A stretch of 64,000 bases of DNA, from the IMG/VR virus record IMGVR_UViG_3300020165_000007, positions 1-64,000 of that record; one strand, given 5' to 3'. The first letter of the stretch is position 1. The number at the start of each line of letters is the position of its first letter. Of the stretch, positions 40,743 through 63,290 are shown one piece after another. Below the pieces are notes generated by a model. The model did no database searches, was not told where the DNA came from, and saw nothing but the letters and a program-made list of their open reading frames with translations. A program made the translations under genes and the position numbers.

Positions 40743-40781
40743 TTTTCTTTTATTCTTTAAAAATTTATCTATTATTCTATA

Positions 40782-40812: not shown

Positions 40813-40825
40813 TTACTGAGAATAA

Positions 40826-40851
40826 AAAAAGAGACTCAATAGTCTCTTTTT
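40826..40851 (-). terminator. Intrinsic terminator upstream of the replication cassette
   Basis: AAAAAGAGACT-CAAT-AGTCTCTTTTT with A/T tails on both sides. Confidence 0.7.
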
Positions 40852-40875
40852 AATAAAAATATTTACACGGTTTAA

Positions 40876-41496
40876 TTACATGAGACCTTCATCTTCAAAT
40901 GGTTGGTCGAACGATTTTTTAATATTGCCGTCCGAATAACTTTCAATGTCATCACTTGTAAGTACGTATTCGTTTTTTCCTGTCTTTTCTAAATCTTCTT
41001 GCTTATCCATAAAGAAGTCAGTTAGTTTTTGATTATATGGATAACTATCTAAACTCCTTAACTGTAATTTTTCTTCAGGAGATTTTTGTCTATATTTTTC
41101 TATTTTAGTTTCCAACTGATTAATTCGGTCTAATATACTATCCATCTCTCCGAGTTTACTTGTTAAATCATCTAATTTACCAAACATAGTATCCATATAT
41201 TCATCCTGTTTATTAGACATATCTTTTTGTGTCGTCACTAAATCTGTAATGTCTAACTCTTCGGTACCGACTTCATCGGTAACATCAACTTCATCATCAC
41301 CACTAACAACTTCAACGTCTGGGTCATCACTTACATCCACAGGTTCAGGGACTTCGTCAACCTCTAAGTCATCTGTCTGAGCAATGTCTTCACCACCTTC
41401 ATCAGGTAAGTCCGTAACTTCCTCTTGCTCAAAAACATAATTATTTATGTTTTGATGTCTTTTTATTTCTTTTAATATTTTTTTATCTATTGACAT
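40876..41496 (-). CDS. Acidic coiled-coil protein, 206 aa (possibly virion-internal)
   Basis: Basic leader, D/E-rich region, heptad segment LDDLTSKLGEMDSILDRINQLETKIE. Confidence 0.7.
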   Translation of the reverse strand: MSIDKKILKEIKRHQNINNYVFEQEEVTDLPDEGGEDIAQTDDLEVDEVPEPVDVSDDPDVEVVSGDDEVDVTDEVGTEELDITDLVTTQKDMSNKQDEYMDTMFGKLDDLTSKLGEMDSILDRINQLETKIEKYRQKSPEEKLQLRSLDSYPYNQKLTDFFMDKQEDLEKTGKNEYVLTSDDIESYSDGNIKKSFDQPFEDEGLM

Positions 41497-41509
41497 AATA
41501 TTTTTTATT

Positions 41510-41734
41510 TTATCCGTTTAATAGTGTCTTCATTCCCTGTGGGGTCTCAACTCTTAGAGTTTTATTAACTTTCATAGTATTATCTACTCTTTCGATTAAC
41601 CCGTCTCTCATTCTTACCGTATAACAGTCTCCGGTATCTAAATCACACACTTCTTTATATCCGTTTCCGTTATCACGCTCAGTTAATCGACTATCCTTTT
41701 GTAGATATGTGTCTAATAAATTTTTTATGTTCAT
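41510..41734 (-). CDS. Hypothetical protein, 74 aa
   Basis: ATG ORF preceded by TATTTAT; contains EVCDLDTGDCY. Confidence 0.7.
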   Translation of the reverse strand: MNIKNLLDTYLQKDSRLTERDNGNGYKEVCDLDTGDCYTVRMRDGLIERVDNTMKVNKTLRVETPQGMKTLLNG

Positions 41735-41773
41735 TACTCTTTTTTATATAAATATATTGATTATTTGGAATAT

Positions 41774-44700
41774 TCAAATATCCCCCCTAGAAACTACCGA
41801 TGTAAAAATATCAAGCCATTCTTGATACTCATCTTTGTATTGAGTATTACCATTTATTTTAGTTTTTATAATGGCAATAATCTGTTGTGGAGTCCCTTGT
41901 ATTGGCTCAATCTCATATATTTGAGCTAAATATAAATACGCTAAAGCCTTAGGTGTTGTATTAGTCGTTTGAGTTTGTTGAAGTTCATTATCCATCGCCT
42001 CAAGTATTGAACCCAGTGGGTTAAATGTAGCTCTCATAAAATCGAGCGAATCTTTAATACTTGAAAATGAAGCGATAGGAAATGTTTGTTCGTTAACAAT
42101 AATACAAGTTTGAGAGTTGAAATATTGCGTCCTTTGTGTTGGTTTTATTTCTCTACTTGTAACCAAATCCATTAAATTATTATTATACACATTTTGCCTA
42201 ACTGGTAGGTTATGAGTAGCAATTCCATATATGAAAAATTTTAATTTATTGTTTGTGAATTGGTTGTTATTTACGTATTCTTTTACTTCTTGTCCATTAA
42301 CAGTAGTTGGTGTCATATCAACAAATGTCTTATCACTATATTTAGTTAGTGATTTACATTTTTCTTCAGGGACTTGACTAACATTTTTGGATTCAGATAA
42401 TGCAATTGTATTATTTGTTTTTCCTGATGGGTTATTAACTTCAATAGACCTTAACTTCTTTTGATATAGGCCTAACAATTCTCTGTTTACACTGGCAACC
42501 AATTTATCTGGTTTTGGGAATGAGTATTTAGGCATTCTTACCCCTTCAAAATTAGTCGTGAATCCCCTCGTACTTATACTATGATTAACATTCATTATAT
42601 AATATGGACCGTAAAACATAGGTACATTTGTTAGGTTAAAGTACATAGTCGGTTGTATCATAACATTACCTAAAGACTGTACCTGACATGTATAACTTCT
42701 AGATTTATAAAAATTATAAAGTGATTGAGTTTGTTGTGCAACCTTTTGACCTGACGCCTGCGCACCTAATTGTTCTAAGACCCCAAATGTCGGTCCAATA
42801 TTTTTATGTTGATTCATGTCAATAGATACTGAGTTAAATACTCCTTGGTTTCTTTTACCAAAGTCTACTTGAAACCCAACACATCTATTACTATCCGAAT
42901 AATTATCTTTATTTTGTTGATTTTCTCTCAATGGACAGTCTGACGGGTTAGTAATATCAAATGAGTCATTACCTTTCCTAATATTTTTATTTTGTTCCAT
43001 ACCTAAATTTTCTGATGGAGGTCCCATCCATATCCCTAACATTTTTGGTCTACTGTTTCTCGCATCGACCTCCATGAATGTTCCAAACAAATCATTCGGT
43101 ATATCTTGTGGGAAAGGTTCCCCTTTTTTTACTCTATCATCTCTACCATAAAAGTTTGTATATGCCGGTGTTGGCATAAAAACAAAATTATTTTTTTCAT
43201 ATATTGTCCCAAGTAAAGAATATACGGTAGTTTTATCATTTCTACCTCTTAAATACCCCTCAAGTTCTTTAATATTTATCACAATTTTATCCCCTATAGG
43301 TCTGTTGGCCCGGTCTAAAAATAAAAAATCTTCAAATATAGTTCTAGTTTTAAAATCTTGTCCAGACACCCACTTATCATTTAGTAGTTGGAACGATTTC
43401 CATAACTCTAACTTAGGTACATTTCCATCAATTTTTGAAATTCTAAGCGCGTCATCCGTGACCGAAACAGAGGGTAATTGTCTGTTTAGTTTAATAAAAA
43501 TATTATTTAATATATTCTGTTGGAATTTTTCCTTACCTATAAGTGCGTCATTTAAATCTTTTATGAATTTACTCTTATTGTATGTGTTGTCTTGTGATTT
43601 TTTAGCTGCGTATATTTTTATTAGGGATGATAAGTTTACAACGTTACTTTCGTTGAATTCGTAATCCATGTCTACGAAAAAATCTGTTAAATACGAACCA
43701 TTATCAGAGTATTTAAATCCGACCTCACTAAACTCTCCCACATTTAGATACATAGAGTTCCATGCGTCTGTGTAATTTCCCCTACTTTCACCTAAAGTAG
43801 TACTTCCACTTTGTGTTGGTAAACTGTTAGGGATGTATGTTTTAAAGTCATAAGGGTCCTTAATCATTTGATTACTGACTGTGGTTATTGAGCCGTAAAC
43901 TTTATTGTCATATTTTCCCGGATTTCCTATTTTTAATACAACTTCACGATATAACGCCTTTTCAATATGATAATTTAAAAAAGTAGTTAATTGCCCGTCA
44001 CTTATATTCTTAAGGTCTTCATCTATGTTATTGGTTATTGTTGGCTTATCGATGATAAATAGTGACTTCATAACCGTAGATAAATTTATATTGTATCCGT
44101 TAACGTTTAATCCGTTAAATGTAGATGGTATGTTGTTATATATCCTTTCTAATTCTAGTATCCTTTCATTATCTATTTCGACAGGACCCATACTTAATTC
44201 TACAAACTTTTCAAATGTAGTTTCACCTCTATTTACCTTATTAATGTTATATTTAGTATCTACTTCACAAAAGTTTAAGAAGTAAGACTCAAAATTATCC
44301 AACATTTCTTTTGTGAATACTCCAAATATATCGTCTATAGATGAGTATTGTAAAGTATCTGAATTACTTATATTAAACGGTTGAGTGTTTTTATTTTCGG
44401 GGTCTATATTTTTAATGTACTGTAATGGTGTTGGTTTATTTACCATTTCATTAGAAAAATACCCGAAGTTAGATGACGCCCAAAAAGACCTGACACTTCC
44501 ATTATAAATAGAATTATTAGTTGTTAAATTCTGTTTATATTTACCCTGATTATTAAAACATTCAAACTCCGCTTGATTAAATTTAACATCACCAAAAGAC
44601 GGTATAATTAATATCTTATCTTCTTGGTTTTCTCTAAAATCATAATTTCCTTTTATGTTAAAGTACTGTGACCAACTGTTCATATTGTATTGACCCCTCG

Positions 44701-47700
44701 TATCTCCGCTAGATATTATTTTATCTATACTTCCATTATCTGAATTACCTATTTTTAAATTTTTCTCAGTTTGTGCGGTTTGTATTTCATCTGAAGTGTA
44801 AGACGTAAAAATATCTTTTTTAGTGAAGTAGTAATATAGTTCGTTTATTACCTTTGGATAAAATCCATTTTCTACTTTCTTAGTGACGTATGGGTATGTT
44901 ATATTTAACACCTCATTAGGTATAGGGGAAATATCTTCCACTATAGTTCCGCTCACCTCCTCTAATTGTTTTATTGTAACGTTATTCCCACCATAATCTT
45001 CAAAAGTGTATGACTTAGATGTATCTCCTCCAATAGGGTCATACGCAAATTTATAGTCAAAGTCTTTCCATACATCATCTAAAATGTCGACACCACTCTC
45101 TTTATATTCTTTATATCTATGCCATATGGAACCATATTTTAATATCCAATAATAAGGGACTTTATGTACTGAAGAAAATTTATTTAATGTTGCAAAAATA
45201 TAGTTTAAATCTGTAGTGACATTATTATTGTATGATTTAAATTTTTCTTTTAATGTTGTTAGAGGTAAGGAATTTAAATATAGATACCCTAAAGCCACGT
45301 ATGGATTTTCTATTTCATTTTTTTCATTTTCAACTCCTTTAAGAATTGCGTTAGTAAAATAAGGCGTATTTAATAATGACGTGGTTTGAGTTTTAGTTAT
45401 AAAGTTTTTGGTAGTATCGTAATTATTACCGTATTCTAAAGTAGATTCTGTAATTATAAATTTTTCTTTTGTTCTATTATTATAATAGTTAATTACTTGA
45501 TTATTAGTCTCAAATATATTTTCACTGTTACTGTTTGGATTTGGATTAATTTCCGAAACTTCTTGGTTAGGTGAGGTAGACGTGTTTGTTATCCATTCAA
45601 AATATGAAAACATTTTTTTATCATATGTTTCGTCCTCATTAGAAAACGAAGCTATTGTCTTTTGGTCCTCGTTAAATGAAAACATTTTAGAAGTGTCGTT
45701 ACTAATTCTTATAGAATTGACTTTACTCCCTTCCGATAGATTGTTTTGTAACCAAGTAAGGTTATTAAATGGATAACCATCCGTAAATGTTAACTCGTCT
45801 GATTGATTTGAGTTAAGATATTTTATCAGTTTATCACTACTCTCACTAGACGAGGATACCCTAATCGAATTACCCTCTAAATATGAAAGTTTATAAACCC
45901 CAAAATCTTGATTTATTAAAGACTTAATATATGGGGTAGTAAAATCACCCCTGTTAAATAAATTCCAACTCTGACCCTGTCCGTTATTAGAAATACTTCT
46001 CATGTATTTTAATAAGTTTTCGTAACTGAATGAAAAGTTTTTTAATAGTTCAATTAATTCAGGAGATTTTACTACCGATTCTTGTAAATTAATGTATTCA
46101 AAATCACTGAAAACACTATACAATTCATTATTATAACCACTTTCTCTATATAATTTAGTGTAGTTAGAATTTAAAAAAGTTCTTTCAAATAATTCGTAAA
46201 AAAATGAAACAATCCTTAAATCATTATATGGCTGTCCTTGAAATGGGAACTCAATGGCGTTACAACTAATAAATGGGTTTTCTTTAAGTTCGTTGGGATA
46301 GTTAAAACCTAATGTTTGATTTTCAATCTGTACCGACCCTTTAACAAACTCTTCAACAAACTGTATTTCAGGCCACACACTATATTTCCACCCTTGTACT
46401 TTATTAACTTCCGACGAGTCGCCAGGATATTTGTCTTCATATAGCTCGTTACCATCCTCATCTATAGAGGTTACAAAATATTGAGGCCACGGGTATATTG
46501 TTGGTGAATCTTCTTTTTCAGTTCCGTAAGCACTTAACCCATTTAATAAGGCGTTTACCATAGTTGTCTCTGTTCCTTCCGATTTTTCGGGTGACATAAT
46601 GGCACCAACTCTAATGGGGTCTTTTCTTTTATCCCAAGCATCATCGTGAACTTTATCCATTAACCTTAAAAATCCGTCTGCGGATGCACATATCACAGCC
46701 ATAACGTTATTTATTGTAGGGTTAAATCCTAAACCAACATCAGGAGACTTTATTTTTTCGGCTAAAGCATAAGAAATTGTTTCTTCAACTTGTTGTTTTT
46801 TAGTTTCAAAATTATCTTGTAATTCTTCTAATTTTCTTAAAAAACTATTTTTAGTTAAATTGTTAGAATTATTTTGGTCTCCAAATACAATATACTGATT
46901 TAATAAAGAATCTTCTTCGACTGTCAATGTTTCCGCGTTAACAACTGTAGGTGGCACCGCAAGTTCCTTTATAATCACATTATTTTTAAAGTCGGATAAC
47001 TCTAACTCAGTAGGCGTCCCTTTGTATCTTAACTCATATGTATTATTATAATCCACTTCCGATTCTGTCGGTTTTTGTTTCTTAAAGTCAGATATCTTAA
47101 TATCACAATTTAATGAAGTCTCTATTTTTTTTCCATTCACTTTCACACTCCCATTAGTACCAAAAACAGGATTTTCATTAAGTATGGTATTGTATTTTTT
47201 AATTATACTTTCTAAGTTTGAGATTGAGTCTTTTCTTTTTTGTAGTTTTTCGTTTTTTCCTCCGTTATTTTTTATGGGATATAATATAGGTGAGTTTGGT
47301 GTTCTGTCTATTAAACCTAACCTGTTACTAATGTTTTCACTAAACCAATTATCCGTAAATAACCCATATATTTGATTCCTATATTCTGTAATCGTGTTTG
47401 AGTATTTTTGAATTTCAGTTAGTGGAGACATATCTTCCTTACCATAGGCCTCCATAACATACCTTTCAAAATTTTGTAGTTTCATTAACATTTGATTAAT
47501 TGTTAACTCTGGAAAATTATCTTCTATGAGTCCTTTGGCTTTGTAAGCGGAGTAGACCTCTTTAATTGTGTCGTAACCTTTTGTGGATTTTATTTGACGT
47601 AATTCTTGTGTATCCAAACCTGGTTGACTACTAGTCTTATTAGTTCCTATTGTTGTAGTCCTACTGTACATATGTGGTAATGCAAATAACGCCTCTATTG

Positions 47701-48388
47701 GAATGTCCGATAACATTGCATATGTTCGACTTATAAAATTGGTACTGATTTTATAGTTACCTGAAGATGGTTCAAATCTAGCGTTAAAATCTTTTAACAT
47801 TAACTCATACCTAATAGCCTTACCATAGTATCCTTTAAGTGTTAATGTAAATAATGGATATGGGAACTGAAAGAATGCACTATACGGTGAGTTTTCTCCT
47901 TGTTCAAATAGAACTCTTCCTTGCACATCCTCCATTTCAATACTAACTATAGCAGCAAAAGACGCATTAACTTTAACTGAAATATTAGTAATTCCTAACA
48001 TTTGACTGTCAGCGTCCCCACCTCTATTTTGACCTAAAGTTAAATTATCAGTCCATGAGGTATCTAAGTAATCGTCTTGCGTTTGAGATTGACCATTATT
48101 AACGGTCTGAGGTTTCATAAAATTTATAACAGTAGACTTATCTTGGTCTAACGCCCCTATTCGTATATTTTCAATAGTATCCTGAAAATTACTACCCACA
48201 ACTAATTTACTTCTAGGTATAACTTTAGTCTCTAAATTAGCGTACATAACTAACTCTTCTTGGTTGATTAACCGTTCAGATACTGTACCATCACTATCAA
48301 CAACTTTATTTGGGTCTATAATTATTATGTTGTCATAGTCTGTTTCTACATATACGTCTTGATTGTTAAAAAATTTGTTACCTGCCAT
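41774..48388 (-). CDS. Very large baseplate hub protein (gp27/VgrG/gpD-like), 2204 aa
   Basis: C-terminal SYTCQVQSLGNVMIQPTMYFNL...GPYYIMNVNHSIS..GFTTNFEGVR resembles the hub signature; follows the LysM/gp53-like gene. Confidence 0.65.
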   Translation of the reverse strand: MAGNKFFNNQDVYVETDYDNIIIIDPNKVVDSDGTVSERLINQEELVMYANLETKVIPRSKLVVGSNFQDTIENIRIGALDQDKSTVINFMKPQTVNNGQSQTQDDYLDTSWTDNLTLGQNRGGDADSQMLGITNISVKVNASFAAIVSIEMEDVQGRVLFEQGENSPYSAFFQFPYPLFTLTLKGYYGKAIRYELMLKDFNARFEPSSGNYKISTNFISRTYAMLSDIPIEALFALPHMYSRTTTIGTNKTSSQPGLDTQELRQIKSTKGYDTIKEVYSAYKAKGLIEDNFPELTINQMLMKLQNFERYVMEAYGKEDMSPLTEIQKYSNTITEYRNQIYGLFTDNWFSENISNRLGLIDRTPNSPILYPIKNNGGKNEKLQKRKDSISNLESIIKKYNTILNENPVFGTNGSVKVNGKKIETSLNCDIKISDFKKQKPTESEVDYNNTYELRYKGTPTELELSDFKNNVIIKELAVPPTVVNAETLTVEEDSLLNQYIVFGDQNNSNNLTKNSFLRKLEELQDNFETKKQQVEETISYALAEKIKSPDVGLGFNPTINNVMAVICASADGFLRLMDKVHDDAWDKRKDPIRVGAIMSPEKSEGTETTMVNALLNGLSAYGTEKEDSPTIYPWPQYFVTSIDEDGNELYEDKYPGDSSEVNKVQGWKYSVWPEIQFVEEFVKGSVQIENQTLGFNYPNELKENPFISCNAIEFPFQGQPYNDLRIVSFFYELFERTFLNSNYTKLYRESGYNNELYSVFSDFEYINLQESVVKSPELIELLKNFSFSYENLLKYMRSISNNGQGQSWNLFNRGDFTTPYIKSLINQDFGVYKLSYLEGNSIRVSSSSESSDKLIKYLNSNQSDELTFTDGYPFNNLTWLQNNLSEGSKVNSIRISNDTSKMFSFNEDQKTIASFSNEDETYDKKMFSYFEWITNTSTSPNQEVSEINPNPNSNSENIFETNNQVINYYNNRTKEKFIITESTLEYGNNYDTTKNFITKTQTTSLLNTPYFTNAILKGVENEKNEIENPYVALGYLYLNSLPLTTLKEKFKSYNNNVTTDLNYIFATLNKFSSVHKVPYYWILKYGSIWHRYKEYKESGVDILDDVWKDFDYKFAYDPIGGDTSKSYTFEDYGGNNVTIKQLEEVSGTIVEDISPIPNEVLNITYPYVTKKVENGFYPKVINELYYYFTKKDIFTSYTSDEIQTAQTEKNLKIGNSDNGSIDKIISSGDTRGQYNMNSWSQYFNIKGNYDFRENQEDKILIIPSFGDVKFNQAEFECFNNQGKYKQNLTTNNSIYNGSVRSFWASSNFGYFSNEMVNKPTPLQYIKNIDPENKNTQPFNISNSDTLQYSSIDDIFGVFTKEMLDNFESYFLNFCEVDTKYNINKVNRGETTFEKFVELSMGPVEIDNERILELERIYNNIPSTFNGLNVNGYNINLSTVMKSLFIIDKPTITNNIDEDLKNISDGQLTTFLNYHIEKALYREVVLKIGNPGKYDNKVYGSITTVSNQMIKDPYDFKTYIPNSLPTQSGSTTLGESRGNYTDAWNSMYLNVGEFSEVGFKYSDNGSYLTDFFVDMDYEFNESNVVNLSSLIKIYAAKKSQDNTYNKSKFIKDLNDALIGKEKFQQNILNNIFIKLNRQLPSVSVTDDALRISKIDGNVPKLELWKSFQLLNDKWVSGQDFKTRTIFEDFLFLDRANRPIGDKIVINIKELEGYLRGRNDKTTVYSLLGTIYEKNNFVFMPTPAYTNFYGRDDRVKKGEPFPQDIPNDLFGTFMEVDARNSRPKMLGIWMGPPSENLGMEQNKNIRKGNDSFDITNPSDCPLRENQQNKDNYSDSNRCVGFQVDFGKRNQGVFNSVSIDMNQHKNIGPTFGVLEQLGAQASGQKVAQQTQSLYNFYKSRSYTCQVQSLGNVMIQPTMYFNLTNVPMFYGPYYIMNVNHSISTRGFTTNFEGVRMPKYSFPKPDKLVASVNRELLGLYQKKLRSIEVNNPSGKTNNTIALSESKNVSQVPEEKCKSLTKYSDKTFVDMTPTTVNGQEVKEYVNNNQFTNNKLKFFIYGIATHNLPVRQNVYNNNLMDLVTSREIKPTQRTQYFNSQTCIIVNEQTFPIASFSSIKDSLDFMRATFNPLGSILEAMDNELQQTQTTNTTPKALAYLYLAQIYEIEPIQGTPQQIIAIIKTKINGNTQYKDEYQEWLDIFTSVVSRGDI

Positions 48389-53452: not shown

Positions 53453-53468
53453 ACGAATCTATTTTTAT

Positions 53469-53475
53469 ATAAATA
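53469..53475 (-). promoter_or_regulatory. TATTTAT element, representative copy of a putative late promoter
   Basis: The same heptamer precedes 13 minus-strand operon-leading starts (listed under findings). Confidence 0.6.
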
Positions 53476-53491
53476 GATTAGATATTCATTT

Positions 53492-55585: not shown

Positions 55586-55609
55586 TATTAAGTATTATAT
55601 TATAAATAC

Positions 55610-55802
55610 TTATCTTTTAGATTTTACTTTTTCGGACTGTTGTTTTCGTTTATCAAATTCCTCAACTAACTTTCCTATAAAGTATTTTCTTTCGTATGTA
55701 GGCATATTAATTAAGTCGTTATAAGAAAAATTTGCATGACGAGTTAAGTAATATATTTCATCAAGCACAGATACCCTAGATTCAGAAGAAAGGCCGAAAA
55801 AA
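55610..55802 (-). CDS. Tail chaperone C-terminal extension (probably made by frameshift)
   Basis: EIYYL....FSYNDLINMPTYERKYFI resembles tail-chaperone second ORFs; no ATG near its start; overlaps the upstream gene in the +1 frame. Confidence 0.65.
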
Positions 55803-56537
55803 CTCCACCCCAAAGGTGACTCTAACTGTCAACTCTTCTCCTGACGGGGCGTTTAAACTCCTTTCTAAGTCTAATTTTGGTTCCGAATTAGAAAGGCTAT
55901 TTCTTATGAATTTAGAATCCATAATTGGTAATTTTATGACGAAGCTTGTTATAAACTCTCTATCGGTGTTGTTGTCTACACTTACTATTTGTTTTGATAA
56001 CCTATTGGTTACTATGGGGGCCGTAACATTGTTTGGGTACTTCTCTAACATATCGTTAAGTTCCTGTACTTCTCCTACCGTAAGTAGTTTACATTTTACC
56101 ATATTTCCTGACTTAGGTAGTTTAAATGTAAATGTCCCGTCTTCTTCGGGTTCTTTTTCAAGTTTTTTGAAATTTAGCTCATCGAGACGAACCGTATGTT
56201 CAAATGAATTATTAGTTTTAGGGTCTCTTAATGTAAAATTATAATCGGGACCAAACGCTGTGTTTCTCAAAAATATTAAAATAGCCTCTAAATCACCTTC
56301 TAATAAGTCATTAACCTTAACGTCTGGTTCATATATCTTATTTTTAACTAAATCATTTATAATGTTTGGATTTTTACCGTTTCCGGCAGATACCAAAATA
56401 TTTTCATCCTGAGCTGTCAGATATCCAATTTTAAGACTCTTTTTTTTGTTTTTATAAAACTTACCCTGCGAGGGAAGTGTTACCACGTCATGTGGTAAAT
56501 TAAAGTCTTGTTGTCCATATTGTTTCGCTTCGTCCAT
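55782..56537 (-). CDS. Tail/baseplate assembly chaperone (T4 gp26-like), 251 aa
   Basis: VTLPSQGKFY, YLTAQDENIL, GDLEAILIFLR..AFG.DY, ends EFFRP; lies between tube and tape measure. Confidence 0.75.
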   Translation of the reverse strand: MDEAKQYGQQDFNLPHDVVTLPSQGKFYKNKKKSLKIGYLTAQDENILVSAGNGKNPNIINDLVKNKIYEPDVKVNDLLEGDLEAILIFLRNTAFGPDYNFTLRDPKTNNSFEHTVRLDELNFKKLEKEPEEDGTFTFKLPKSGNMVKCKLLTVGEVQELNDMLEKYPNNVTAPIVTNRLSKQIVSVDNNTDREFITSFVIKLPIMDSKFIRNSLSNSEPKLDLERSLNAPSGEELTVRVTFGVEFFRPFF

Positions 56538-56554
56538 ATTTTTGTGTAAAAAAA

Positions 56555-56580
56555 AACCATAGGGAATAAACCCTATGGTT
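56555..56580 (-). terminator. Intrinsic terminator after the tail tube gene
   Basis: AACCATAGGG-AATAAA-CCCTATGGTT followed by a long T-run on the minus strand. Confidence 0.75.
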
Positions 56581-56614
56581 AATTATATAAACTATTATTT
56601 TTTTTTCAATAGTA

Positions 56615-57103
56615 TTAGTAAACCAAAATACATCTATCAGGACGTAATGTCGCTGTAATTGTTGCCAATGCGTCATCACTATATCCCAAACTATCAAAAT
56701 TAACATCAGTTAAGAAAGTACCCTGTAGAATCCATTTTTCAACCGCAACTCCTGTAGGGTCTAACATTTCAAGGTCTAGGTCTTTCTTATAACCAGCTGC
56801 GTATCCCATACGACCTGTAACGGACTCTGAGGTTAATCTTACCCATTCCATTAAGGCTTGTGCTGCCGATGGTCCTATGGGGTCTCTAAACGTCACGTTT
56901 ATCGTATTCCAAGTAAATCTACCAGCAACATAAGTAGATGTGTTTAAGAAAGGAATCTCAGTTGCGTTAATTTGGACGTTAGGTCTAGATGTGGACTCAA
57001 CATACCAAGAGTTAATACCCAATGATGAAGGAAAACTTAGAACAAATCTATTTTTTCTTTTCGGTTCATACGGTACGGGCATTTTCATTAATAAATCAGC
57101 CAT
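56615..57103 (-). CDS. Tail tube protein (gp19-like)
   Basis: EPKRKNRF, YVAGRFTWNTINVTFRD, YKKD..L..LDP.G..VEKW.L.G.F. Confidence 0.88.
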   Translation of the reverse strand: MADLLMKMPVPYEPKRKNRFVLSFPSSLGINSWYVESTSRPNVQINATEIPFLNTSTYVAGRFTWNTINVTFRDPIGPSAAQALMEWVRLTSESVTGRMGYAAGYKKDLDLEMLDPTGVAVEKWILQGTFLTDVNFDSLGYSDDALATITATLRPDRCILVY

Positions 57104-57224
57104 TGTATTTTGGTTTTAAATTTCGTTGTTTATTTTATTATAAATATCAGTGTTAAACTTTTTTCTCTTTACTTTTACTTTTTTAATTGTAAAATCCTTA
57201 ACTAGAGATTAGAAACTAGAATTT

Positions 57225-58076
57225 TTAAACTTCTTTTTTTTCTCCTCCTTTAGTTAAATAAGTTTTTACTGGGCTTTCATCTTTATATTCTTTATCTAAA
57301 AATGTTTTTATAGATTCTATATTTCCTGGGTCGTCATCAGAAAATCCTATTTGAGGTACAAAGTTATTACTCACATCATTAGTAAATGATACTTTTTGAC
57401 CTAATTTTTTACTTTGGTATTTAACGTAATTAATAAACTCTCTTAACGCTTTTATCTTACCTTCCTCCGGATTAGAGGCCGACCCCTCACCATAAGTAAC
57501 AGGATAATATTTATTCATATCTAAATATTCTTTTATTAAAAGTTGGTCGTCTTTCATAAGTTCTCCTGATAAATCCCGATATTTTTTTAAGTTTTCTACT
57601 AACTTACTTGAGTCTATTCCATTGTGGTTTGTAACAATAAGGTTATAAATAGAGTCTCTTAACACTGACGGAGTGTGACCTCTAGCAGTAATAATTGCAA
57701 ATATAGAACCTCCGTTAATACATTCCACAAAATCATTCCATGAAGGACCTGGAGAAGCTAATAAAGAGTCCACTATAAATTTCTTATCACCATCTACTCC
57801 AAAATTACGATAGGGATTTTCGGAATAACCTACAACAGTCTCATTATTATATTCAAAAGGCTCCACACCAATCTTTTGTCGATATTCGGCAAAATCTTCA
57901 GTAGACATACCTATCTCATTACCTTCATCAGTTTTTAAAATTATTCGAGTCGGCATAACGACAATATTATCATCCCAGTCAAAAGCATAATACTTTAAGT
58001 CAGGTTGACCGTCTTCGATACCTTCACTTATAAATAATTTATTAAGACTTTGATGTATAATACTTCTTAGACTCAT
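57225..58076 (-). CDS. HAD-superfamily phosphatase-like protein
   Basis: Motif I AFDWDDNI, motif II ITARGH, Lys (EEGK), motif IV FSDDD..N. Confidence 0.75.
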   Translation of the reverse strand: MSLRSIIHQSLNKLFISEGIEDGQPDLKYYAFDWDDNIVVMPTRIILKTDEGNEIGMSTEDFAEYRQKIGVEPFEYNNETVVGYSENPYRNFGVDGDKKFIVDSLLASPGPSWNDFVECINGGSIFAIITARGHTPSVLRDSIYNLIVTNHNGIDSSKLVENLKKYRDLSGELMKDDQLLIKEYLDMNKYYPVTYGEGSASNPEEGKIKALREFINYVKYQSKKLGQKVSFTNDVSNNFVPQIGFSDDDPGNIESIKTFLDKEYKDESPVKTYLTKGGEKKEV

Positions 58077-58081
58077 GTATT

Positions 58082-58219
58082 TTAATTATTTAGATTTTCA
58101 ATTAATCTCTCTAATTGTGATTCCGTCAAAACAATATTTTGAGGTTTTTCAGAATAGGTCTTAACTCCATTACCATTAATTTGTAATGACTCTCTTAGTA
58201 ATTTTTTTTTAAATTCCAT
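58082..58219 (-). CDS. Small 45-aa protein (not in ORF track)
   Basis: MEFKKKLLRESLQINGNGVKTYSEKPQNIVLTESQLERLIENLNN; A-rich 5' context; stop 5 nt before the next ATG. Confidence 0.65.
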   Translation of the reverse strand: MEFKKKLLRESLQINGNGVKTYSEKPQNIVLTESQLERLIENLNN

Positions 58220-58255
58220 TTTTTTATTTTATTAAACGTTTAATTATATGGCTAA

Positions 58256-58285
58256 AAATGGGGGATACTTTTGTACCCCCCATTT
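58256..58285 (-). terminator. Hairpin after the tail sheath gene
   Basis: AAATGGGGG...CCCCCATTT inverted repeat with T-run. Confidence 0.6.
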
Positions 58286-58293
58286 AATAAATA

Positions 58294-61200
58294 TCAGATA
58301 TCCTCAAATGATGCACCTGTCGGAGTAATTAAGAATTCTATATCGATGAATTCTAACGCTCTTGTTGGTTTTAGATATATTTTACCTACTAAGGTGTTAT
58401 TATCTAAATCTTCAGGAGTGTTCTGAACGACAACTCTAAAGTCAATCAAACCTCTATCTCTTCTGATAGAATCTAAGATTGGGTTTACTGAGTCCAAGAA
58501 TTCTTGTCTTACTTGGTCATCATTCTGTTCGAACAATAGTCTTACCGCTACTGCTGAAATCAACTTACGAGCTTGTAATAACAATCTTCTAACATTGATT
58601 CTGTCGAGTGCTGACTGTTTAACTTGAGTAGTTTTATTACCCCATATTACTGTACCAACATCTGAGAAAGTTGCGATTGGGTTGATTCTACCTTTATATA
58701 GAATGTCTCTATCATCTTGAGTTAACTTCTTACGAGCTTTAATACCATTTACTAAACCTCTTGTATAACCCGCGGATGCGAACCATGGGAATGATATATT
58801 ATCTGTTAACGCTAAGTTTCTAACAACTTCAGCGGTAGGTGGTAAGTAAATCTGTGTGTTATTAACAGTATCTCTTGTAAGAATCCATGGGTAATAAGTT
58901 GCAGTATAGTTAGAGTCAATTCCAGTATCTTCTAAGTTTTCGGTCGCTTCTTGTGGGTAAATAAAGTCAGTTGTAAAATTAGACGTAGTATTAACAAACA
59001 TGTTATAGTCAGGTGTGGTACAGATATAAATTGAGTCCGCTCTATCCGTTTCAATCATATCAATCGCCTCCTCTACTAAGTTTGAGTTATTAACATAATC
59101 TATACCTGAAGTAGTAAACACATTAATATTTACAGCTTCAGGGTTAACAAAAGTCCACTGACCCCATAAGTAAGCATAATAGTCAGTATTACCCCAATCT
59201 TGTTTATCTGGACCAACAATTGTTTTAAACGCCCCCCATCCTGTTGCACTTGGGAATCTAACTGATGGTGCCGCTCCACGTAGATATCCATTATTACCTA
59301 ATATAAATGTATCTCCATTAGTACGAGACTCTCGATAGATATCCCATCCATCAAATCCTCCAGTAGGAACTAATGTAAATTTACGAGAATTTAATCTGTA
59401 ATATGGACTATCTTCGTTAGGTTCACTATCGAATGATGCGTCACCAACCTCAAACGCAGTTTCACCCGAAGTTACATACTGAGATGGGATTAGAACTACA
59501 GTCGCTCCTGAGTCCATATGATATCCTTTTGTTAATTCCGCCCACGGAGATGACTCAGTAGCGGTAGATAAGTTAGTCGGATTTTGTTTACCCTTATAAG
59601 AGGTAAAGTCGACATCAATACCGACAGTATTCGATACACCTAAGAAAACTCTTCTTGGGTTATCGCCCGCACTTCTTGTTAAGTTATCTCCATTAGAAGA
59701 CCCAAAAGGAGGGTTAAATAACACCTCACCTGGAGTATCATACTTAGTCTTATAAAGTAGGTGTGGTGATTTATAACTACTGTACTGTCGAGTTTGGTAA
59801 CCTTTAAAACCACAAGGTAATGAATCGGACGGAGCCTCTTCATTTACTTCTAACATAATATATCTTGACTTTAACTCAAAATCTCCATTAGCTGTACCGA
59901 TTTTTTTAGCCACATAACTATTAAGATTTATATCCATGGTACAGTTTGTGAATTTTTCTAATACGATTGGGTTAGAATCGGTATCATAAAAACTTCTAAC
60001 AACAACGTCAAAGGTTAGGTTATTAAATGATATATTCATTATAGAGACTTTAATCTCTCTGTTCGCCGAGTTACCGTCTGAGATTGAAATAACTTTAAAT
60101 AAGTCGGAAACTTCATTACCTCTTAATTCTGAAACTAAATATGGTGTAGAGGGGGTTTGATACCTATCTAAGTACCATCCGATACCTGTATTATCAACAT
60201 CTTCTCTCGCACTTTGTAATCCTAATAAAGTAGTATTTAATCCTCTAATCTTACCTTCTTTGTATCCTGTATTTAATAAGTTATAATAAATTTCCTCGAC
60301 AAATAATGGAATTTCATTACTTGGTTTAGAAAAATTACTTTGACCTAACACTTTACTTATAAAGTTAGGGTCACTTAAAGAAAGTGATGTGTTGAACGTA
60401 AATATCTCTGAGTCGTTTGTTATACCTGAAATTTGGAAATTAGAGAATGGATTATTAGTTATTCCTGAATATACTCCTGTAGAGTTAATTGTTACATTGG
60501 TTAATCCTGAAACTTCGTAATCGGGATTATTAGAATTACTAGTTGTTGATATCCCTCTTGACCTTAGTGTACTAACAACCATATTATGGTAATCAGTGAT
60601 TGGTGTTCCTGTATATGTGGTAGTATATACAACACCCACACCTGTATAATTGTTACCTACAGTATTTGTTAATCCTGTGATAGACAATCCAAAACCGACA
60701 CCACTGTATTCACCTGTACCACTATTATATGGGAATAAAGCGTAATACCATGAATCATTTTCAGACGCTTCAAAATCTGCGGTATCAATGGTAAGACCAT
60801 CCACACCCAATACGTTAGTTGTACCTGTCCATGTTCCCGAAGCTCCAGTTATTGCGTCATAAGTTTCGCCACTAACAGTACCAAACATAAATGATGTGGC
60901 TCCTGAACTGACGGGGTTAACAATACTTTGATAAACCGCAGATTCAAAGTTGCCCTGTAATGTTGATATATTACCTGAAAATGTTGTATAAGGTAATCCG
61001 AACACACTTTCTATAGATGAAGGTAAGTTACTAAAATCAGTAATTTCAGTTGAACTACTATTACCTGATACACCACTAAAAGTTATTGTATAAGCAATTC
61101 CGTCAGAATCTTTAGGAGTAATTAATGATTTATTTACGTTACCCACCGTTGATATTGACCATGATGGTCCAGCATCGTATCCTGATAAACCTAAGACACG

Positions 61201-61479
61201 AGTCACAAAAAGTTGATTGGATTGTTGTAAGTAGGCTTTGGCAATATATGCCGCCTCATATTTTGGAATCTGTGTGTTTACAAATTTAGTTGGTTCTGTC
61301 CCCCCAAAAAATGAGGTAAACTCATCAAAGTTTGTAATGAAGATAGGTTCGAACGCCGGACCTGATAAGGTTTCACCGACGACACCTAAAGTCGTTACAC
61401 CGACACTTTGAGCCACAAAACTTAAATCTCTTTCTGATGTATATACACCTGGAGATACGAATACTTTTTCTGCTGCCAT
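58294..61479 (-). CDS. Contractile tail sheath protein (gp18-like), 1061 aa
   Basis: SPGVYTSERD, GPAFEP, YYPW, PWFASAGYTRG, RINPI, WGNKT, RINVRRLL, FEQND, EFIDI. Confidence 0.95.
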   Translation of the reverse strand: MAAEKVFVSPGVYTSERDLSFVAQSVGVTTLGVVGETLSGPAFEPIFITNFDEFTSFFGGTEPTKFVNTQIPKYEAAYIAKAYLQQSNQLFVTRVLGLSGYDAGPSWSISTVGNVNKSLITPKDSDGIAYTITFSGVSGNSSSTEITDFSNLPSSIESVFGLPYTTFSGNISTLQGNFESAVYQSIVNPVSSGATSFMFGTVSGETYDAITGASGTWTGTTNVLGVDGLTIDTADFEASENDSWYYALFPYNSGTGEYSGVGFGLSITGLTNTVGNNYTGVGVVYTTTYTGTPITDYHNMVVSTLRSRGISTTSNSNNPDYEVSGLTNVTINSTGVYSGITNNPFSNFQISGITNDSEIFTFNTSLSLSDPNFISKVLGQSNFSKPSNEIPLFVEEIYYNLLNTGYKEGKIRGLNTTLLGLQSAREDVDNTGIGWYLDRYQTPSTPYLVSELRGNEVSDLFKVISISDGNSANREIKVSIMNISFNNLTFDVVVRSFYDTDSNPIVLEKFTNCTMDINLNSYVAKKIGTANGDFELKSRYIMLEVNEEAPSDSLPCGFKGYQTRQYSSYKSPHLLYKTKYDTPGEVLFNPPFGSSNGDNLTRSAGDNPRRVFLGVSNTVGIDVDFTSYKGKQNPTNLSTATESSPWAELTKGYHMDSGATVVLIPSQYVTSGETAFEVGDASFDSEPNEDSPYYRLNSRKFTLVPTGGFDGWDIYRESRTNGDTFILGNNGYLRGAAPSVRFPSATGWGAFKTIVGPDKQDWGNTDYYAYLWGQWTFVNPEAVNINVFTTSGIDYVNNSNLVEEAIDMIETDRADSIYICTTPDYNMFVNTTSNFTTDFIYPQEATENLEDTGIDSNYTATYYPWILTRDTVNNTQIYLPPTAEVVRNLALTDNISFPWFASAGYTRGLVNGIKARKKLTQDDRDILYKGRINPIATFSDVGTVIWGNKTTQVKQSALDRINVRRLLLQARKLISAVAVRLLFEQNDDQVRQEFLDSVNPILDSIRRDRGLIDFRVVVQNTPEDLDNNTLVGKIYLKPTRALEFIDIEFLITPTGASFEDI

Positions 61480-61617
61480 ATTAATTATTTTTCTTTTTAT
61501 TTATTTTATTGATAAATATTATAGAAAAAACCAAACGACAAATGTTATGGCGTTATATTTATTTACAAGTATGAAAAATTTCTTACTTTTTTCTACCTTT
61601 TTAAAAACCTTTCTTAA

Positions 61618-61767
61618 ATGATAAAAATAAAGAATTTAAAAATATCTGAAGAATCACATGATATGTTGAAAAAACACTGTCAAAAAAACGGATTAAAAAT
61701 GTTTAAGTTTATTGAAAAACTTATTGAAGAAAACTGTAAAGAAGAAATCGACATCTATGGTGAATAA
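61618..61767 (+). CDS. Small ribbon-helix-helix-like DNA-binding protein, 49 aa (not in ORF track)
   Basis: MIKIKNLKISEESHDMLKKHCQKNGLKMFKFIEKLIEENCKEEIDIYGE has a strand-helix-Gly-helix pattern; stop abuts the convergent gene. Confidence 0.65.
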   Translation: MIKIKNLKISEESHDMLKKHCQKNGLKMFKFIEKLIEENCKEEIDIYGE

Positions 61768-62817
61768 TTAATTACTATAGGGTATGTGTGCTTTTGTCTT
61801 AATAGTGGAATCCTTACTGTCATCTATTTTAACGACATCGAACTTAATGATGTCATTGGTGTTAACCTGTATATTACTTAAATCATCTCCCATATAATTG
61901 TCGTTAATATATACTGAAAACTCATCGACGTTATCTGTCGACAAAAAAGTTAGGTCTATGGTATATGGATATTTTTCAGATAAACTATTAATTCCCGACA
62001 TAAATAAAATATCTATGTCGAAGTTCTGAGGATTAGGTGGGTTTTTTCTAGCCCTTCTTGATTGTGTCCCCGTCTCCACTTCATATAATGTTAATGCCCT
62101 ACTAATTGCCGGAGAAACTTGGAACTCTTCCTCGTCAATTAAAAAACCCATCATTAAGAACTCATAGTTTTGAACGTAGTACTTCCTTTTTTCAATATCC
62201 AATACTGACTCATCAGATATACCATTTAAAATTATAGGAACGTAATGACCCTTAACAAATGTATAAGCTTGTCTTGAAGAAAATTTCTGTAAAACTAATT
62301 TGTTAAACTCATTCAAGTGTCGCATTTTAGTACAAAATATTTTTATATTATACGTAATATCTACAGGTACGGGTTGAGGGATTTTATAAATATCCATTCC
62401 TTTTCTTTGACCGTCCCACGTTGGAACCTTAGCGTAGTAAAATTGTTTTCTGTTTGGTATGGTGTACTGTAGTGAAGGGTTGGTACCGTACTTAACGTCT
62501 GGATTTCTTACAGTTGCAATAAATGGGGGTTTGATGTTTTTATCTAAGTTCTGAAAATCCCAAGTCTCAGCAAACTGAGACCAGTTTTGAGTTGTAATAA
62601 TAATATCAACAGGGTTAACTTTTTTACCCTCTGCAGTCATCTCTAAATCGTTCTTAACAAAATCTAACATACCCCTATCTAAGTCAGCATGTAAAACACT
62701 CTTAGGTAAATATGTACCATCTTTTTGAATATATTCCAGTAGTTGCTCCCTCCTCTCTAATAAAATTTTATCAGGAGTTAAAGGTAGATGTTTTTTTATT
62801 TTTTTAGGAAATGACAT
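61768..62817 (-). CDS. Putative tail terminator / neck protein (gp15-like)
   Basis: PQPVPVDITYNIKIF motif; position between head-closure and sheath genes. Confidence 0.55.
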   Translation of the reverse strand: MSFPKKIKKHLPLTPDKILLERREQLLEYIQKDGTYLPKSVLHADLDRGMLDFVKNDLEMTAEGKKVNPVDIIITTQNWSQFAETWDFQNLDKNIKPPFIATVRNPDVKYGTNPSLQYTIPNRKQFYYAKVPTWDGQRKGMDIYKIPQPVPVDITYNIKIFCTKMRHLNEFNKLVLQKFSSRQAYTFVKGHYVPIILNGISDESVLDIEKRKYYVQNYEFLMMGFLIDEEEFQVSPAISRALTLYEVETGTQSRRARKNPPNPQNFDIDILFMSGINSLSEKYPYTIDLTFLSTDNVDEFSVYINDNYMGDDLSNIQVNTNDIIKFDVVKIDDSKDSTIKTKAHIPYSN

Positions 62818-63290
62818 TAGATTACTATTTCATTTATATGGAAGATTTTATTTCGAGTATTAATCATATCAATCTCATTTGCGTTATAAATTGGTTCTTC
62901 GCTATCTTTTTTAACAAATGAATCGTATTTGTATGGGTTATATGTGATTACGTTATCATTAGTTTCTGCAGGCATTTCTTCACAAGGGAACTGACAATAG
63001 TCAACTAAATCACCAATAACAAATGCGTGTACGTTCTTTCTCATTTCTTGTCTTACTTTGTCTTTTCCCCCCTTTCTTACCCTAAACTCTACATTTCTTA
63101 ATTTAACGTAGTCGGCATACAAAATTACCCTACCCCCATAAGTCACTGAAAATGTATGTTTATGTAAGTTATAATATACCATAACCCTCAAACCAGTTAA
63201 ATCCTCAGGAGTTAATTCTTCCTCCTGTTCAATAATTAAACCCATATGAGTCTTCATTTTATTAATTTCTTTTAATAGATATCTATTCAT
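62817..63290 (-). CDS. Conserved-looking phage hypothetical protein, 157 aa
   Basis: VYYNLHK..FSV, RKNVHAFVIG, YNPYK core preceded by a ~30-aa leader. Confidence 0.7.
   Translation of the reverse strand: MNRYLLKEINKMKTHMGLIIEQEEELTPEDLTGLRVMVYYNLHKHTFSVTYGGRVILYADYVKLRNVEFRVRKGGKDKVRQEMRKNVHAFVIGDLVDYCQFPCEEMPAETNDNVITYNPYKYDSFVKKDSEEPIYNANEIDMINTRNKIFHINEIVI

What the first reader, a model, noticed from the sequence alone, without database searches (positions are those of the whole stretch)
40876..63290. Shared N-terminal leaders on unrelated proteins: possible capsid-targeting and cleavage tag
Seen: 40876..41496 begins KKILKEIKRHQNINNYVFEQEE and 62817..63290 begins RYLLKEINKMKTHMGLIIEQEEE. 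The 45-aa 58082..58219 has KKLLRES...LTESQLERLIE, and the HAD protein has LRSIIHQSLNKLFISEG before its catalytic motif. All sit among late structural genes. Known: T4 internal proteins carry a short capsid-targeting leader removed by gp21 after [IL]-x-E. Inference: a portable tag that loads non-structural cargo into the head for injection.
Basis: partly seen in the sequence, partly recalled or inferred. Interest (0 to 1): 0.65.

Follow-up and report, generated by a model that had tools for sequence, protein, structure and literature searches.

The report
Portable N-terminal leaders on phage proteins
A 270-kb marine T4-like jumbo phage puts short helical leaders ending in a hydrophobic-x-Glu motif on about 28 otherwise unrelated late proteins, which looks like an expanded form of the T4 tag that loads proteins into the head and is then cut off, though packaging and cleavage are not shown.

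Summary
The window is the first 64 kb of a 270,383-bp far-T4 myovirus, probably of a marine Bacteroidota host.

About 28 of 319 ORFs carry an 11-30 residue amphipathic N-terminal leader. There are at least four sequence classes (A-D), and every one ends in [LIVF]-x-Glu, usually followed by Gln and a variable polar linker.

- **Cargos are unrelated.** The parts after the leaders give no BLASTP hit to one another.
- **Leaders are interchangeable.** Syntenic orthologues of 62817..63290 in related phages carry class A, B or C leaders. Bacillus and Mycobacterium phage homologues have none.
- **The T4 machinery is present.** The genome encodes a T4 gp21-type prohead protease (Peptidase_S77). Its gp23-type capsid protein has an invariant prodomain ending L-I-N-E|A.
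- **Timing fits.** Leader genes are enriched for the promoter-like motif that precedes the structural genes.

The most likely explanation is a multi-class T4-style capsid-targeting propeptide system (confidence about 0.5). Neither virion location nor cleavage is shown. The class C motif also occurs internally or C-terminally in a few proteins. 40876..41496 looks more like an assembly protein than like cargo.

Verdict: real, a new variant of a known kind, interpretation partly supported.

The parts
63228..63290 (-). Class A leader (residues 1-21, ending I-I-E|Q) of the L5_gp82-domain protein 62817..63290
   Evidence: In 88 orthologues the leader positions and the Glu are >=90% conserved. An indel-rich linker follows, then a highly conserved cargo. 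The Pfam domain starts at residue 33.
62817..63227 (-). Acidic linker plus cargo: Phage_L5_gp82 domain (PF25735), function unknown
   Evidence: Pfam E = 1.6e-31, residues 33-146; PHROG 586. Bacillus and Mycobacterium phage homologues align from residue 30-33 only.
41428..41496 (-). Class-A-like leader (residues 1-23, ending V-F-E|Q) of the acidic coiled-coil protein 40876..41496
   Evidence: The leader and its E-Q are invariant in 7 aligned family members, and a linker of variable length follows. It is modelled as helix 2-25.
40876..41427 (-). Acidic disordered linker, long helix 83-135 and a conserved helical C-terminal domain. This is the last gene of a late operon (promoter-like motif at 41748..41754, terminator at 40785..40875).
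   Evidence: Structure model; net charge -39, pI 4.1; conserved synteny of 74-aa ORF, this gene, then gp32; promoter motif and terminator.
58082..58219 (-). Conserved 45-aa ORF made almost only of leader-like motifs: K-K-L-L-R-E|S at residues 5-11 and a class C motif at residues 28-45
   Evidence: The class C HMM gives 30.3 bits at residues 28-45. The ORF is conserved as 45 and 47 aa in L092 and L094 and is absent in L096.
58023..58076 (-). Class-B-like leader (residues 1-18, ending I-S-E|G) of the HAD-like protein
   Evidence: In 120 homologues the leader varies in length (about 14-19 residues before the Glu) and the E-G is >=90% conserved; it is invariant in the 32-member alignment A2. It is modelled as helix 3-14 at low pLDDT, separate from the fold.
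57225..58022 (-). Cargo: probable HAD-superfamily phosphatase between the sheath and tube genes
   Evidence: Invariant F-D-W-D-D-N, I-T-A-R-G-H and G-F-S-D-D-D motifs. Weak structural matches to HAD phosphatases and the T4 Pnkp phosphatase. Homologues in huge phages carry other short leaders.
63808..63814 (-). Candidate late-promoter motif TATTTAT upstream of the operon 63287..63802, 62817..63290, 61768..62817
   Evidence: The motif is 15-19-fold enriched upstream of start codons. It precedes the sheath, tube, baseplate, protease, portal and bS21 genes.
58294..61479 (-). Tail sheath gene (context: the tagged genes are embedded in the tail module)
   Evidence: tblastn matches to phage sheath proteins; Pfam Phage_sheath_1C in orthologues.
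56615..57103 (-). Tail tube gene (context)
   Evidence: PHROG 4542, E = 8e-30.

Best explanation
The leaders are capsid-targeting propeptides of the T4 kind, diversified into at least four sequence classes. Each is a short amphipathic helix; classes C and D add a short basic-hydrophobic strand in front of the helix.

Proposed mechanism (inferred):
1. The helix docks a late-made protein onto the scaffolding core of the assembling prohead.
2. The gp21-type serine protease (genome 115943..116665) then cuts after the Glu of the terminal [LIV]-x-E. It cuts the capsid protein the same way, after L-I-N-E.
3. The cargo is left free inside the head and is expelled with the DNA.

Shown:
- The leaders exist on about 28 of 319 ORFs.
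- Their cargos are unrelated.
- Leader classes are interchangeable on one orthologous gene.
- Each class ends in an invariant Glu followed by a variable linker.
- The protease and a gp23-type capsid protein are encoded.
- The leader genes carry the same promoter-like motif as the structural genes.

Inferred: binding to the core, cleavage, packaging and injection.
For: - An all-against-all comparison of N-termini finds four leader families. Their HMMs hit only N-termini in this genome, apart from the C-terminal half of the 45-aa ORF 58082..58219 and one internal match in g183747.
- The 29 cargos give no BLASTP hit to each other at E < 0.01.
- [LIVMF]-x-E-Q is 4-fold enriched in the first 30 residues, p = 2.5e-6. 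All listed leaders end in h-x-E. Glu is invariant in the class C alignment, >=90% conserved in the 62817 family and invariant in the aligned HAD family members.
- Orthologues of 62817..63290 in the same synteny carry class A, class C or class B leaders. Unrelated phages have the domain without a leader.
- Peptidase_S77 is present at E = 1.1e-22 and Gp23 at 4.3e-73. The capsid prodomain is invariant up to L-I-N-E|A in 72 relatives and is followed by a variable stretch, as at the known T4 gp23 site.
- 15 of 30 leader genes, against 57 of 289 others, have the TATTTAT motif that also precedes the sheath, tube, portal, protease and bS21 genes (Fisher p = 8e-4).
- In relatives, 29 class C and 17 class D leader ORFs lie within 10 kb of the capsid gene. 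They include a small poly-Lys protein that resembles the basic T4 internal proteins.
- Leaders are conserved as amino acids across synonymous codon differences.
- T4 precedent: 10-19 residue propeptides, L/I-x-E cleavage, and Ip proteins that share only the leader (PMC9026906; PMC12373910).
Against: - There is no virion proteome or N-terminal data for this phage or any relative.
- The leaders have no sequence similarity to the T4 CTS.
- Hydrophobic-x-Glu is a weak motif: [LI]-x-E alone is only about 1.5-fold enriched at N-termini.
- The class C motif occurs internally or C-terminally in a few proteins (and the 45-aa ORF). Cleavage after the Glu there would not remove it as a leader.
- One carrier has a PG_binding_1 domain matching endolysin families. 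An endolysin needs no head targeting.
- About 28 tagged proteins is far more than T4 has.
- Four of the tagged genes sit in the tail module, not the head module.
- The protease-leader co-fold gave no verdict.
Confidence: 0.5

Rival explanations
1. The element is an uncleaved docking helix. It attaches diverse proteins to some other common hub, such as the capsid exterior, the tail or baseplate, or a non-virion assembly. This would resemble the way conserved N-terminal anchors hold variable fibre or decoration domains. The terminal Glu would be part of the binding surface or a helix cap, not a cleavage site.
For: The motif is modular and exchangeable. It can sit internally or at a C-terminus (58082..58219). 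Four carriers lie in the tail module. The genes carry the candidate late promoter motif.
Against: Cargos such as the L5_gp82 domain, an HAD-like phosphatase, a peptidoglycan-binding protein and an LRR protein are not typical external virion parts. A conserved helix followed by an invariant Glu and then an indel-rich linker matches the capsid protein's own predicted processing site. Many carriers cluster beside the head genes in this genome and in relatives.
Confidence: 0.22
2. There is no shared protein-level function. The N-termini look alike because an AT-rich genome whose Bacteroidota host makes little use of Shine-Dalgarno sequences (general knowledge) selects A/T-rich, unstructured first codons, which code for Lys, Glu, Ile, Leu and Asn. 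The phage-encoded bS21 might add to this. Helix-like, Glu-rich starts then arise by convergence, and some paralogy adds to the resemblance.
For: GC is 33%. A bS21 gene is present, and the literature links it to late translation (PMC9723584). Profile searches do not connect the leader families to each other. [LI]-x-E alone is barely enriched.
Against: The most highly expressed late proteins (capsid, sheath, tube, portal) lack such leaders. The motifs are conserved as amino acids with synonymous variation. Spacing and specific residues, for example T/S-E-x-D/Q-L in class C, are conserved across distant relatives. One cargo carries three different leader classes, with the junction always at the Glu. 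Family HMM hits are confined to termini.
Confidence: 0.13
3. The leaders recruit a chaperone or protease other than the prohead protease. One candidate is the phage-encoded Hsp70/DnaJ pair, since the basic-hydrophobic start of classes C and D resembles the general Hsp70 binding pattern. The purpose would be folding, delivery or timed turnover of late proteins.
For: The genome encodes Hsp70 (PF00012, E = 1e-253) and a full DnaJ. Classes C and D begin with Lys/Arg followed by three or four hydrophobic residues and Thr/Ser.
Against: Hsp70 motifs are degenerate and would not explain the conserved helix, the invariant terminal Glu or classes A and B, which lack that start. There is no co-localisation of leader genes with the chaperone genes.
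Confidence: 0.05

Closest known systems
T4 capsid targeting sequences (CTS) of internal proteins IpI-III, Alt and gp24, removed by the prohead protease gp21
   Same: A short N-terminal amphipathic propeptide sits on otherwise unrelated proteins and ends in L/I-x-Glu. The phage has a gp21-type (Peptidase_S77) protease and a gp23-type capsid protein with a prodomain ending in h-x-E|A. The carriers include small, very basic proteins encoded near the head genes, and many sit in a variable accessory region. Class B (11 residues, M-K-E-L-I-R-K-I-L-R-E) matches T4 leaders in length and layout.
   Different: There is no sequence similarity to M-K-T-Y-Q-E-F-I-A-E. At least four distinct leader classes of 11-30 residues exist instead of one. 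About 28 carriers (9% of ORFs) compare with fewer than ten in T4. The residue after the Glu is mostly Gln. Some carriers lie in tail operons. The motif is occasionally internal or C-terminal. Packaging and cleavage are unproven here.
Propeptides of head and ejection proteins in phiKZ-like giant phages (phiKZ gp175, SPN3US gp245 proteases)
   Same: A jumbo phage with many head-associated proteins processed after Glu by a diverged gp21 homologue. Identical N-termini on diverged paralogues have been noted (PMC5694885).
   Different: Those cleavage motifs are S/A/G-x-E or A-x-E, and most propeptides are longer than 100 residues. Here the protease is a clear S77 match, the leaders are short, and the motif has a hydrophobic residue two positions before the Glu.
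Encapsulin cargo-loading peptides and the P22 scaffolding C-terminal helix
   Same: A short portable helix docks cargo or scaffold to the inside of an HK97-fold shell.
   Different: Those peptides are mostly C-terminal and are not removed by a maturation protease. The resemblance is analogy only (my own knowledge, not tested here).
bS21-encoding Bacteroidetes phages (Chen et al. 2022, PMC9723584)
   Same: The head-module layout is the same, with a bS21 gene on the opposite strand between the portal and protease genes. The predicted host phylum is Bacteroidota, and genomes reach over 300 kb.
   Different: In the passages I read, that paper describes freshwater genomes and does not mention N-terminal leaders. 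This genome recurs in marine and estuarine samples.

Membership tests
T4-type CTS / gp21-processed head proteins | The phage encodes a gp21-type prohead core serine protease | tested here: met
   Genome 115943..116665: Pfam Peptidase_S77 E = 1.1e-22, PHROG 207 E = 2e-43.
T4-type CTS / gp21-processed head proteins | gp23-type major capsid protein with an N-terminal prodomain ending in L/I-x-Glu | tested here: met
   Pfam Gp23 E = 4.3e-73. The 60-residue N-terminus is invariant in 72 relatives, ends L-I-N-E|A, and is followed by a variable S/T/D/G stretch. Cleavage itself is inferred.
T4-type CTS / gp21-processed head proteins | A short N-terminal leader is the only similarity between otherwise unrelated proteins | tested here: met
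   Leader families; no cargo-to-cargo BLASTP hit; leader classes swapped on one orthologue.
T4-type CTS / gp21-processed head proteins | The leader ends in the protease motif L/I-x-Glu | tested here: met
   All 28 listed leaders end in [LIVFY]-x-E or a close variant. The Glu is invariant in alignments. h-x-E-Q enrichment is p = 2.5e-6.
T4-type CTS / gp21-processed head proteins | Sequence similarity to the T4 CTS consensus | tested here: not met
   No class resembles M-K-T-Y-Q-E-F-I-A-E (T4 consensus from my own knowledge). A pattern search for aromatic-x-x-[FL]-h-x-E at N-termini finds only a few unrelated cases. Closer look-alikes occur in other phages (immuto; LR756501 neighbour ORF).
T4-type CTS / gp21-processed head proteins | Tagged proteins are present inside mature heads and lack the leader | not testable with these tools
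   Needs virion mass spectrometry or N-terminomics. The literature searches found no proteome for this clade.
T4-type CTS / gp21-processed head proteins | The protease binds and cuts the leader | tested here: inconclusive
   Co-fold of the protease with residues 1-45 of 62817..63290 scored 0.00, which is no verdict and is not evidence either way.
HAD-superfamily phosphatase (for 57225..58076) | Rossmann-like HAD fold with DxDx(T/V), a Thr/Ser motif, Lys, and an acidic motif IV | tested here: inconclusive
   Invariant F-D-W-D-D-N, I-T-A-R-G-H and G-F-S-D-D-D. No Pfam or PDB sequence hit. Model pLDDT is 72.6. Foldseek's best matches are HAD phosphatases at E = 0.02-0.06. VIA Z is 6.5 for the T4 Pnkp phosphatase, with many HAD rows at Z 4-5.4, all within the noise band that tool states.
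Phage_L5_gp82 (PF25735) for 62817..63290 | Match to the family model above the curated cut-off | tested here: met
   109.1 bits against a cut-off of 27, residues 33-146.

The most novel reading that the evidence does not exclude
The four or more leader classes are not redundant. They would form an addressing code that sends cargo to different virion compartments (head core, portal-proximal space, tail lumen or baseplate) or sets copy number and order of ejection. On this reading about 9% of this uncultured marine phage's proteome is a sequence-readable arsenal of injected effectors. New cargos would be recruited simply by swapping a 20-residue module.
Probability: 0.12. Interest if true: 0.85.

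Novelty: new variant of a known kind. Interest (0 to 1): 0.6.

Why it matters
Which phage proteins travel inside the particle and enter the cell with the DNA is known for only a handful of model phages. In T4, all three such proteins turned out to be specific inhibitors of host restriction systems (PMC12373910).

If these leaders are true targeting propeptides, injected effectors could be read directly from sequence in an abundant, uncultured clade of marine and freshwater Bacteroidota jumbo phages. That would give dozens of candidate anti-defence or host-takeover proteins.

It would also show that the T4 loading mechanism tolerates several unrelated address peptides. That is useful for engineering protein delivery by phage heads.

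Tried and rejected
- **Co-fold of protease and leader.** The prohead protease with residues 1-45 of 62817..63290 scored 0.00, which is no verdict. I do not use it as evidence.
- **tblastn with a leader alone.** A 28-residue class C leader against 50,697 phage records found no match; the query is too short.
- **Profile search for class C.** The class C alignment searched against the whole records of Flavobacterium phage immuto and two huge phages produced no candidates. Without a positive control this is uninformative.
HMMs built only from each gene's orthologues do not find the other gene. I therefore do not claim that the two leaders are homologous.
- **[LI]-x-E as a signal.** On its own it is only about 1.5-fold enriched at N-termini. 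The density of [LI]-x-E in the scaffold-like protein is a modest 1.9-fold.
- **Family scans of cargos.** Pfam and PHROG scans of about 25 cargos left nearly all of them as ORFans.
- **Solved-structure sequence searches.** Nothing was found for the HAD-like or L5_gp82 proteins.
- **Nearby phage records.** Megablast of the region against phage records found no match, and 40876..41496 has no tblastn match there.
- **Fold search of 40876..41496.** I did not run it, because long helices give meaningless matches.
- **Paralogy as the explanation.** I rejected the idea that the carriers are simply paralogues.
- **A DNA-level cassette as the explanation.** I rejected this because codons differ at synonymous sites.
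Full report
**What the window is.** The 64-kb window is the start of a single 270,383-bp contig with 33% GC. Nearly all genes in the region of the finding are on the minus strand.

The region holds the tail module of a distant T4-like myovirus:
- tail sheath at 58294..61479;
- tail tube at 56615..57103 and a T4-type baseplate hub at 55782..56537;
- a gp32-type single-strand DNA-binding protein at 39888..40784.

Outside the window, at 112-122 kb, lies a T4-type head module. It contains a gp23-type capsid protein, an acidic scaffold-like protein, a Peptidase_S77 (gp21-type) prohead protease, the portal and the large terminase. A ribosomal protein bS21 gene sits on the opposite strand. That is the layout described for bS21-encoding Bacteroidetes phages (PMC9723584).

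The nearest isolates are Flavobacterium phage immuto (about 39% capsid identity), Microcystis phage Mel-JY01 and Rhodothermus phage RM378. A SusC-like receptor gene fits a Bacteroidota host. Near-identical DNA recurs in marine and seawater metagenomes.

**The observation.** 40876..41496 and 62817..63290 share [IL]-L-K-E-I, eleven residues, then E-Q-E-E.

As a pair they are each other's best or second-best match among 304 N-termini. The shuffle test gives p = 7e-4. Leader profiles built from the orthologues of one gene do not find the other. So the pair shares an architecture rather than demonstrable homology.

The important point is that these are four of many. An all-against-all comparison of the first 45 residues of 319 ORFs gives four families:
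- **Class A:** h-L-N/K-E-h-N-R-h-K-x-x-M-G-h.
- **Class B:** M-K-E-L-I-R-K-I-L-R-E.
- **Class C:** K-h-h-K-L-T-E-S-D-L-x-x-h-h-x-x-V-h-x-E.
- **Class D:** R-I-I-L-S-E-x-E-K-x-x-I-x-x-h-Y/H ... E-Q.

About 28 proteins carry one of them. Every leader ends in a hydrophobic residue, any residue, then Glu. The next residue is most often Gln, and a polar, often acidic or Pro-rich linker follows.

The four-residue pattern [LIVMF]-x-E-Q is about four times more frequent in the first 30 residues than elsewhere (21 occurrences; Fisher p = 2.5e-6).

**Are the carriers unrelated?** Yes, as far as sequence can tell. After removing the leaders, the 29 cargos give no BLASTP hit to each other at E < 0.01.

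The few cargos that can be named are diverse:
- a Phage_L5_gp82 domain;
- a probable HAD-type phosphatase (weak support);
- a peptidoglycan-binding domain that matches endolysin families;
- a leucine-rich repeat protein;
- a tiny poly-Lys protein.

**Are the leaders portable?** This is the strongest result. The database holds 1,940 homologues of 62817..63290.

Among the best 120, the nearly invariant cargo is preceded by a class A leader in most. In others it is preceded by a class C leader, by a class C leader plus a zinc-ribbon insert, or by a class B leader plus the same insert.

The class C version lies in the same gene order as in the window: 171-aa gene, this gene, 349-aa gene, sheath, HAD-like gene, tube, hub. 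It is therefore an orthologue with an exchanged leader.

In 88 class A orthologues the leader positions and the Glu are at least 90% conserved. The next 5-15 residues vary in sequence and length, and then the cargo is highly conserved.

Homologues in Bacillus and Mycobacterium phages start at the cargo. The tblastn alignments and the Pfam model begin at residue 30-33.

The HAD-like protein behaves the same way. In 120 homologues its class-B-like leader varies in length while the E-G junction is conserved; it is invariant in the 32-member alignment. Remote homologues in huge phages have other short leaders ending in h-x-E|N.

The 40876 family keeps its leader and E-Q invariant in front of a linker that changes length and composition between relatives.

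**Link to head maturation.** T4 gp21 cuts after L/I-x-Glu. It removes 10-19 residue targeting propeptides from internal proteins that otherwise share no similarity (PMC9026906; PMC12373910).

This phage has a clear gp21 homologue. Its capsid protein has a 60-residue N-terminus that is invariant in 72 relatives and ends L-I-N-E|A. A variable Ser/Thr/Asp/Gly stretch follows, and then the conserved body. This matches the arrangement at the known T4 gp23 cleavage site. The endings h-N-E and h-x-E are exactly what the leaders have.

A helical 246-aa protein next to the portal gene has 3.7-fold excess [LI]-x-E, as expected for a core protein that is cut to pieces.

In this genome the class A carriers lie just beyond the head module on the same strand (127-147 kb). 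Thirteen more carriers cluster in a small-gene accessory region at 178-217 kb.

In 80 related contigs, 29 class C and 17 class D leader ORFs lie within 10 kb of the capsid gene, often directly downstream of it. They include a conserved small protein made of a class C leader, a poly-Lys run and a short Cys-containing tail. That recalls the small basic T4 internal proteins.

**Timing.** The octamer TATTTATA is 15-fold enriched just upstream of start codons. The core TATTTAT precedes the sheath, tube, baseplate, protease, portal and bS21 genes, 72 genes in all.

Half of the leader genes have it, against a fifth of the others (Fisher p = 8e-4). Others follow in the same operons:
- 62817..63290 is the second gene behind such a motif at 63808..63814.
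- 40876..41496 is the last gene behind the motif at 41748..41754 and is followed by a terminator.

I read this motif as the late promoter; that is an inference. Contigs from metatranscriptomes of three studies lie on the HAD-like gene, the 45-aa ORF, the sheath gene and 62817..63290. DNA carry-over cannot be excluded, and contigs give no expression levels.

**What speaks against a simple T4 copy.**
- The leaders do not resemble the T4 sequence.
- There are several classes and many carriers.
- The class C motif is the C-terminal half of the conserved 45-aa ORF 58082..58219. In some relatives it is internal, with no Met in front, or C-terminal.
- One carrier may be an endolysin.
- 40876..41496 is modelled as a leader helix, a 55-residue acidic disordered segment and a long coiled-coil helix. 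It looks like an assembly or scaffold-type protein rather than a passenger.

These points fit a general docking module at least as well as a strictly N-terminal cleaved signal. They keep the uncleaved-anchor rival alive.

**Rivals considered.**
- *Translation or composition artefact.* This is unlikely. The most abundant late proteins lack leaders. Conservation is at the amino-acid level across synonymous changes. The junction of swapped leaders is always at the Glu.
- *Chaperone-recruitment tag.* The phage encodes Hsp70 and DnaJ, so this is possible, but it explains little of the pattern.

**Verdict.** I put 0.5 on a T4-style targeting and cleavage system, about 0.2 on an uncleaved docking helix, and the rest on weaker alternatives.

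Relative to what is known, this is a new variant of a known kind.

Noticed in passing
genome 117230..117415 (+), outside the window (L001:9230-9415): A ribosomal protein bS21 gene (PF01165, E = 6.8e-11) sits on the opposite strand inside the head module, between the portal and protease genes. This matches the published bS21 Bacteroidetes phages.
   Followed up: partly
window 1..346: A 27-bp tandem repeat with about 10.7 copies (78% matches; an 81-bp super-unit at 92%). Read on the minus strand it is a Ser/Gly-rich repeat. It is probably the 3' part of a gene that runs over the contig end.
   Followed up: no
genome-wide; in the window at 41748..41754, 53469..53475, 55602..55608, 57140..57146, 61512..61518 and 63808..63814 (minus strand): The motif TATTTAT(A) lies within 70 nt upstream of 72 start codons, mostly 4-40 nt, including nearly all structural operons. 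It is a candidate late promoter. A host-like TAnnTTTG motif precedes 27 other genes.
   Followed up: partly
genome 159494..161374, 238027..239001, 228082..230835: The phage encodes a full Hsp70 (PF00012, E = 1e-253), a DnaJ with J, zinc-finger and C-terminal domains, and a SusC-like TonB-dependent receptor with a CarboxypepD_reg domain.
   Followed up: no
genome 114024..115619: The scaffold-like acidic protein between the protease and capsid genes contains five tandem copies of a 21-residue unit rich in Gly, Lys, Asp, Glu, Ser, Arg and His.
   Followed up: no
relatives of 62817..63290 (P0107-P0119): A small CxxC...CxxC zinc-ribbon module is inserted between the leader and the L5_gp82 cargo in some lineages. 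It is combined with class B or class C leaders.
   Followed up: no
genome 183747..184889: This ORF has a class-A-like motif internally (residues 180-198, after an in-frame Met) and a poly-Arg run at its called start. It is either two genes in one frame, an internal processing site, or a miscalled start.
   Followed up: no
window 58220..58293 and 40785..40875: There are strong stem-loop plus T-run terminators directly after the sheath gene and after 40876..41496. The 45-aa ORF and the HAD-like gene therefore lie behind a terminator with no TATTTAT motif of their own. The L096 lineage has one upstream of its HAD-like gene.
   Followed up: partly
L099 (Flavobacterium phage vB_FspM_immuto_2-6A, NC_055915.1 117631..118931 and 125241..125468): Two adjacent head-module proteins share an N-terminus of the form N-F-x-L-x-x-F-L-x-E-N-K-L-T ... 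L-K-E, and a third similar one follows the protease gene. These are closer to the T4 CTS pattern and sit in a culturable phage. One of them is annotated as cob(I)alamin adenosyltransferase, which looks doubtful.
   Followed up: partly
genome 163842..176421: Twelve tRNA genes lie in two clusters, and there are none in the window. Several small spurious-looking ORFs overlap them.
   Followed up: no
window 41510..41734: A conserved 74-aa protein with an invariant D-T-G-D-C-Y-T motif always precedes the 40876 family gene in relatives, with abutting stop and start codons. Its function is unknown.
   Followed up: no
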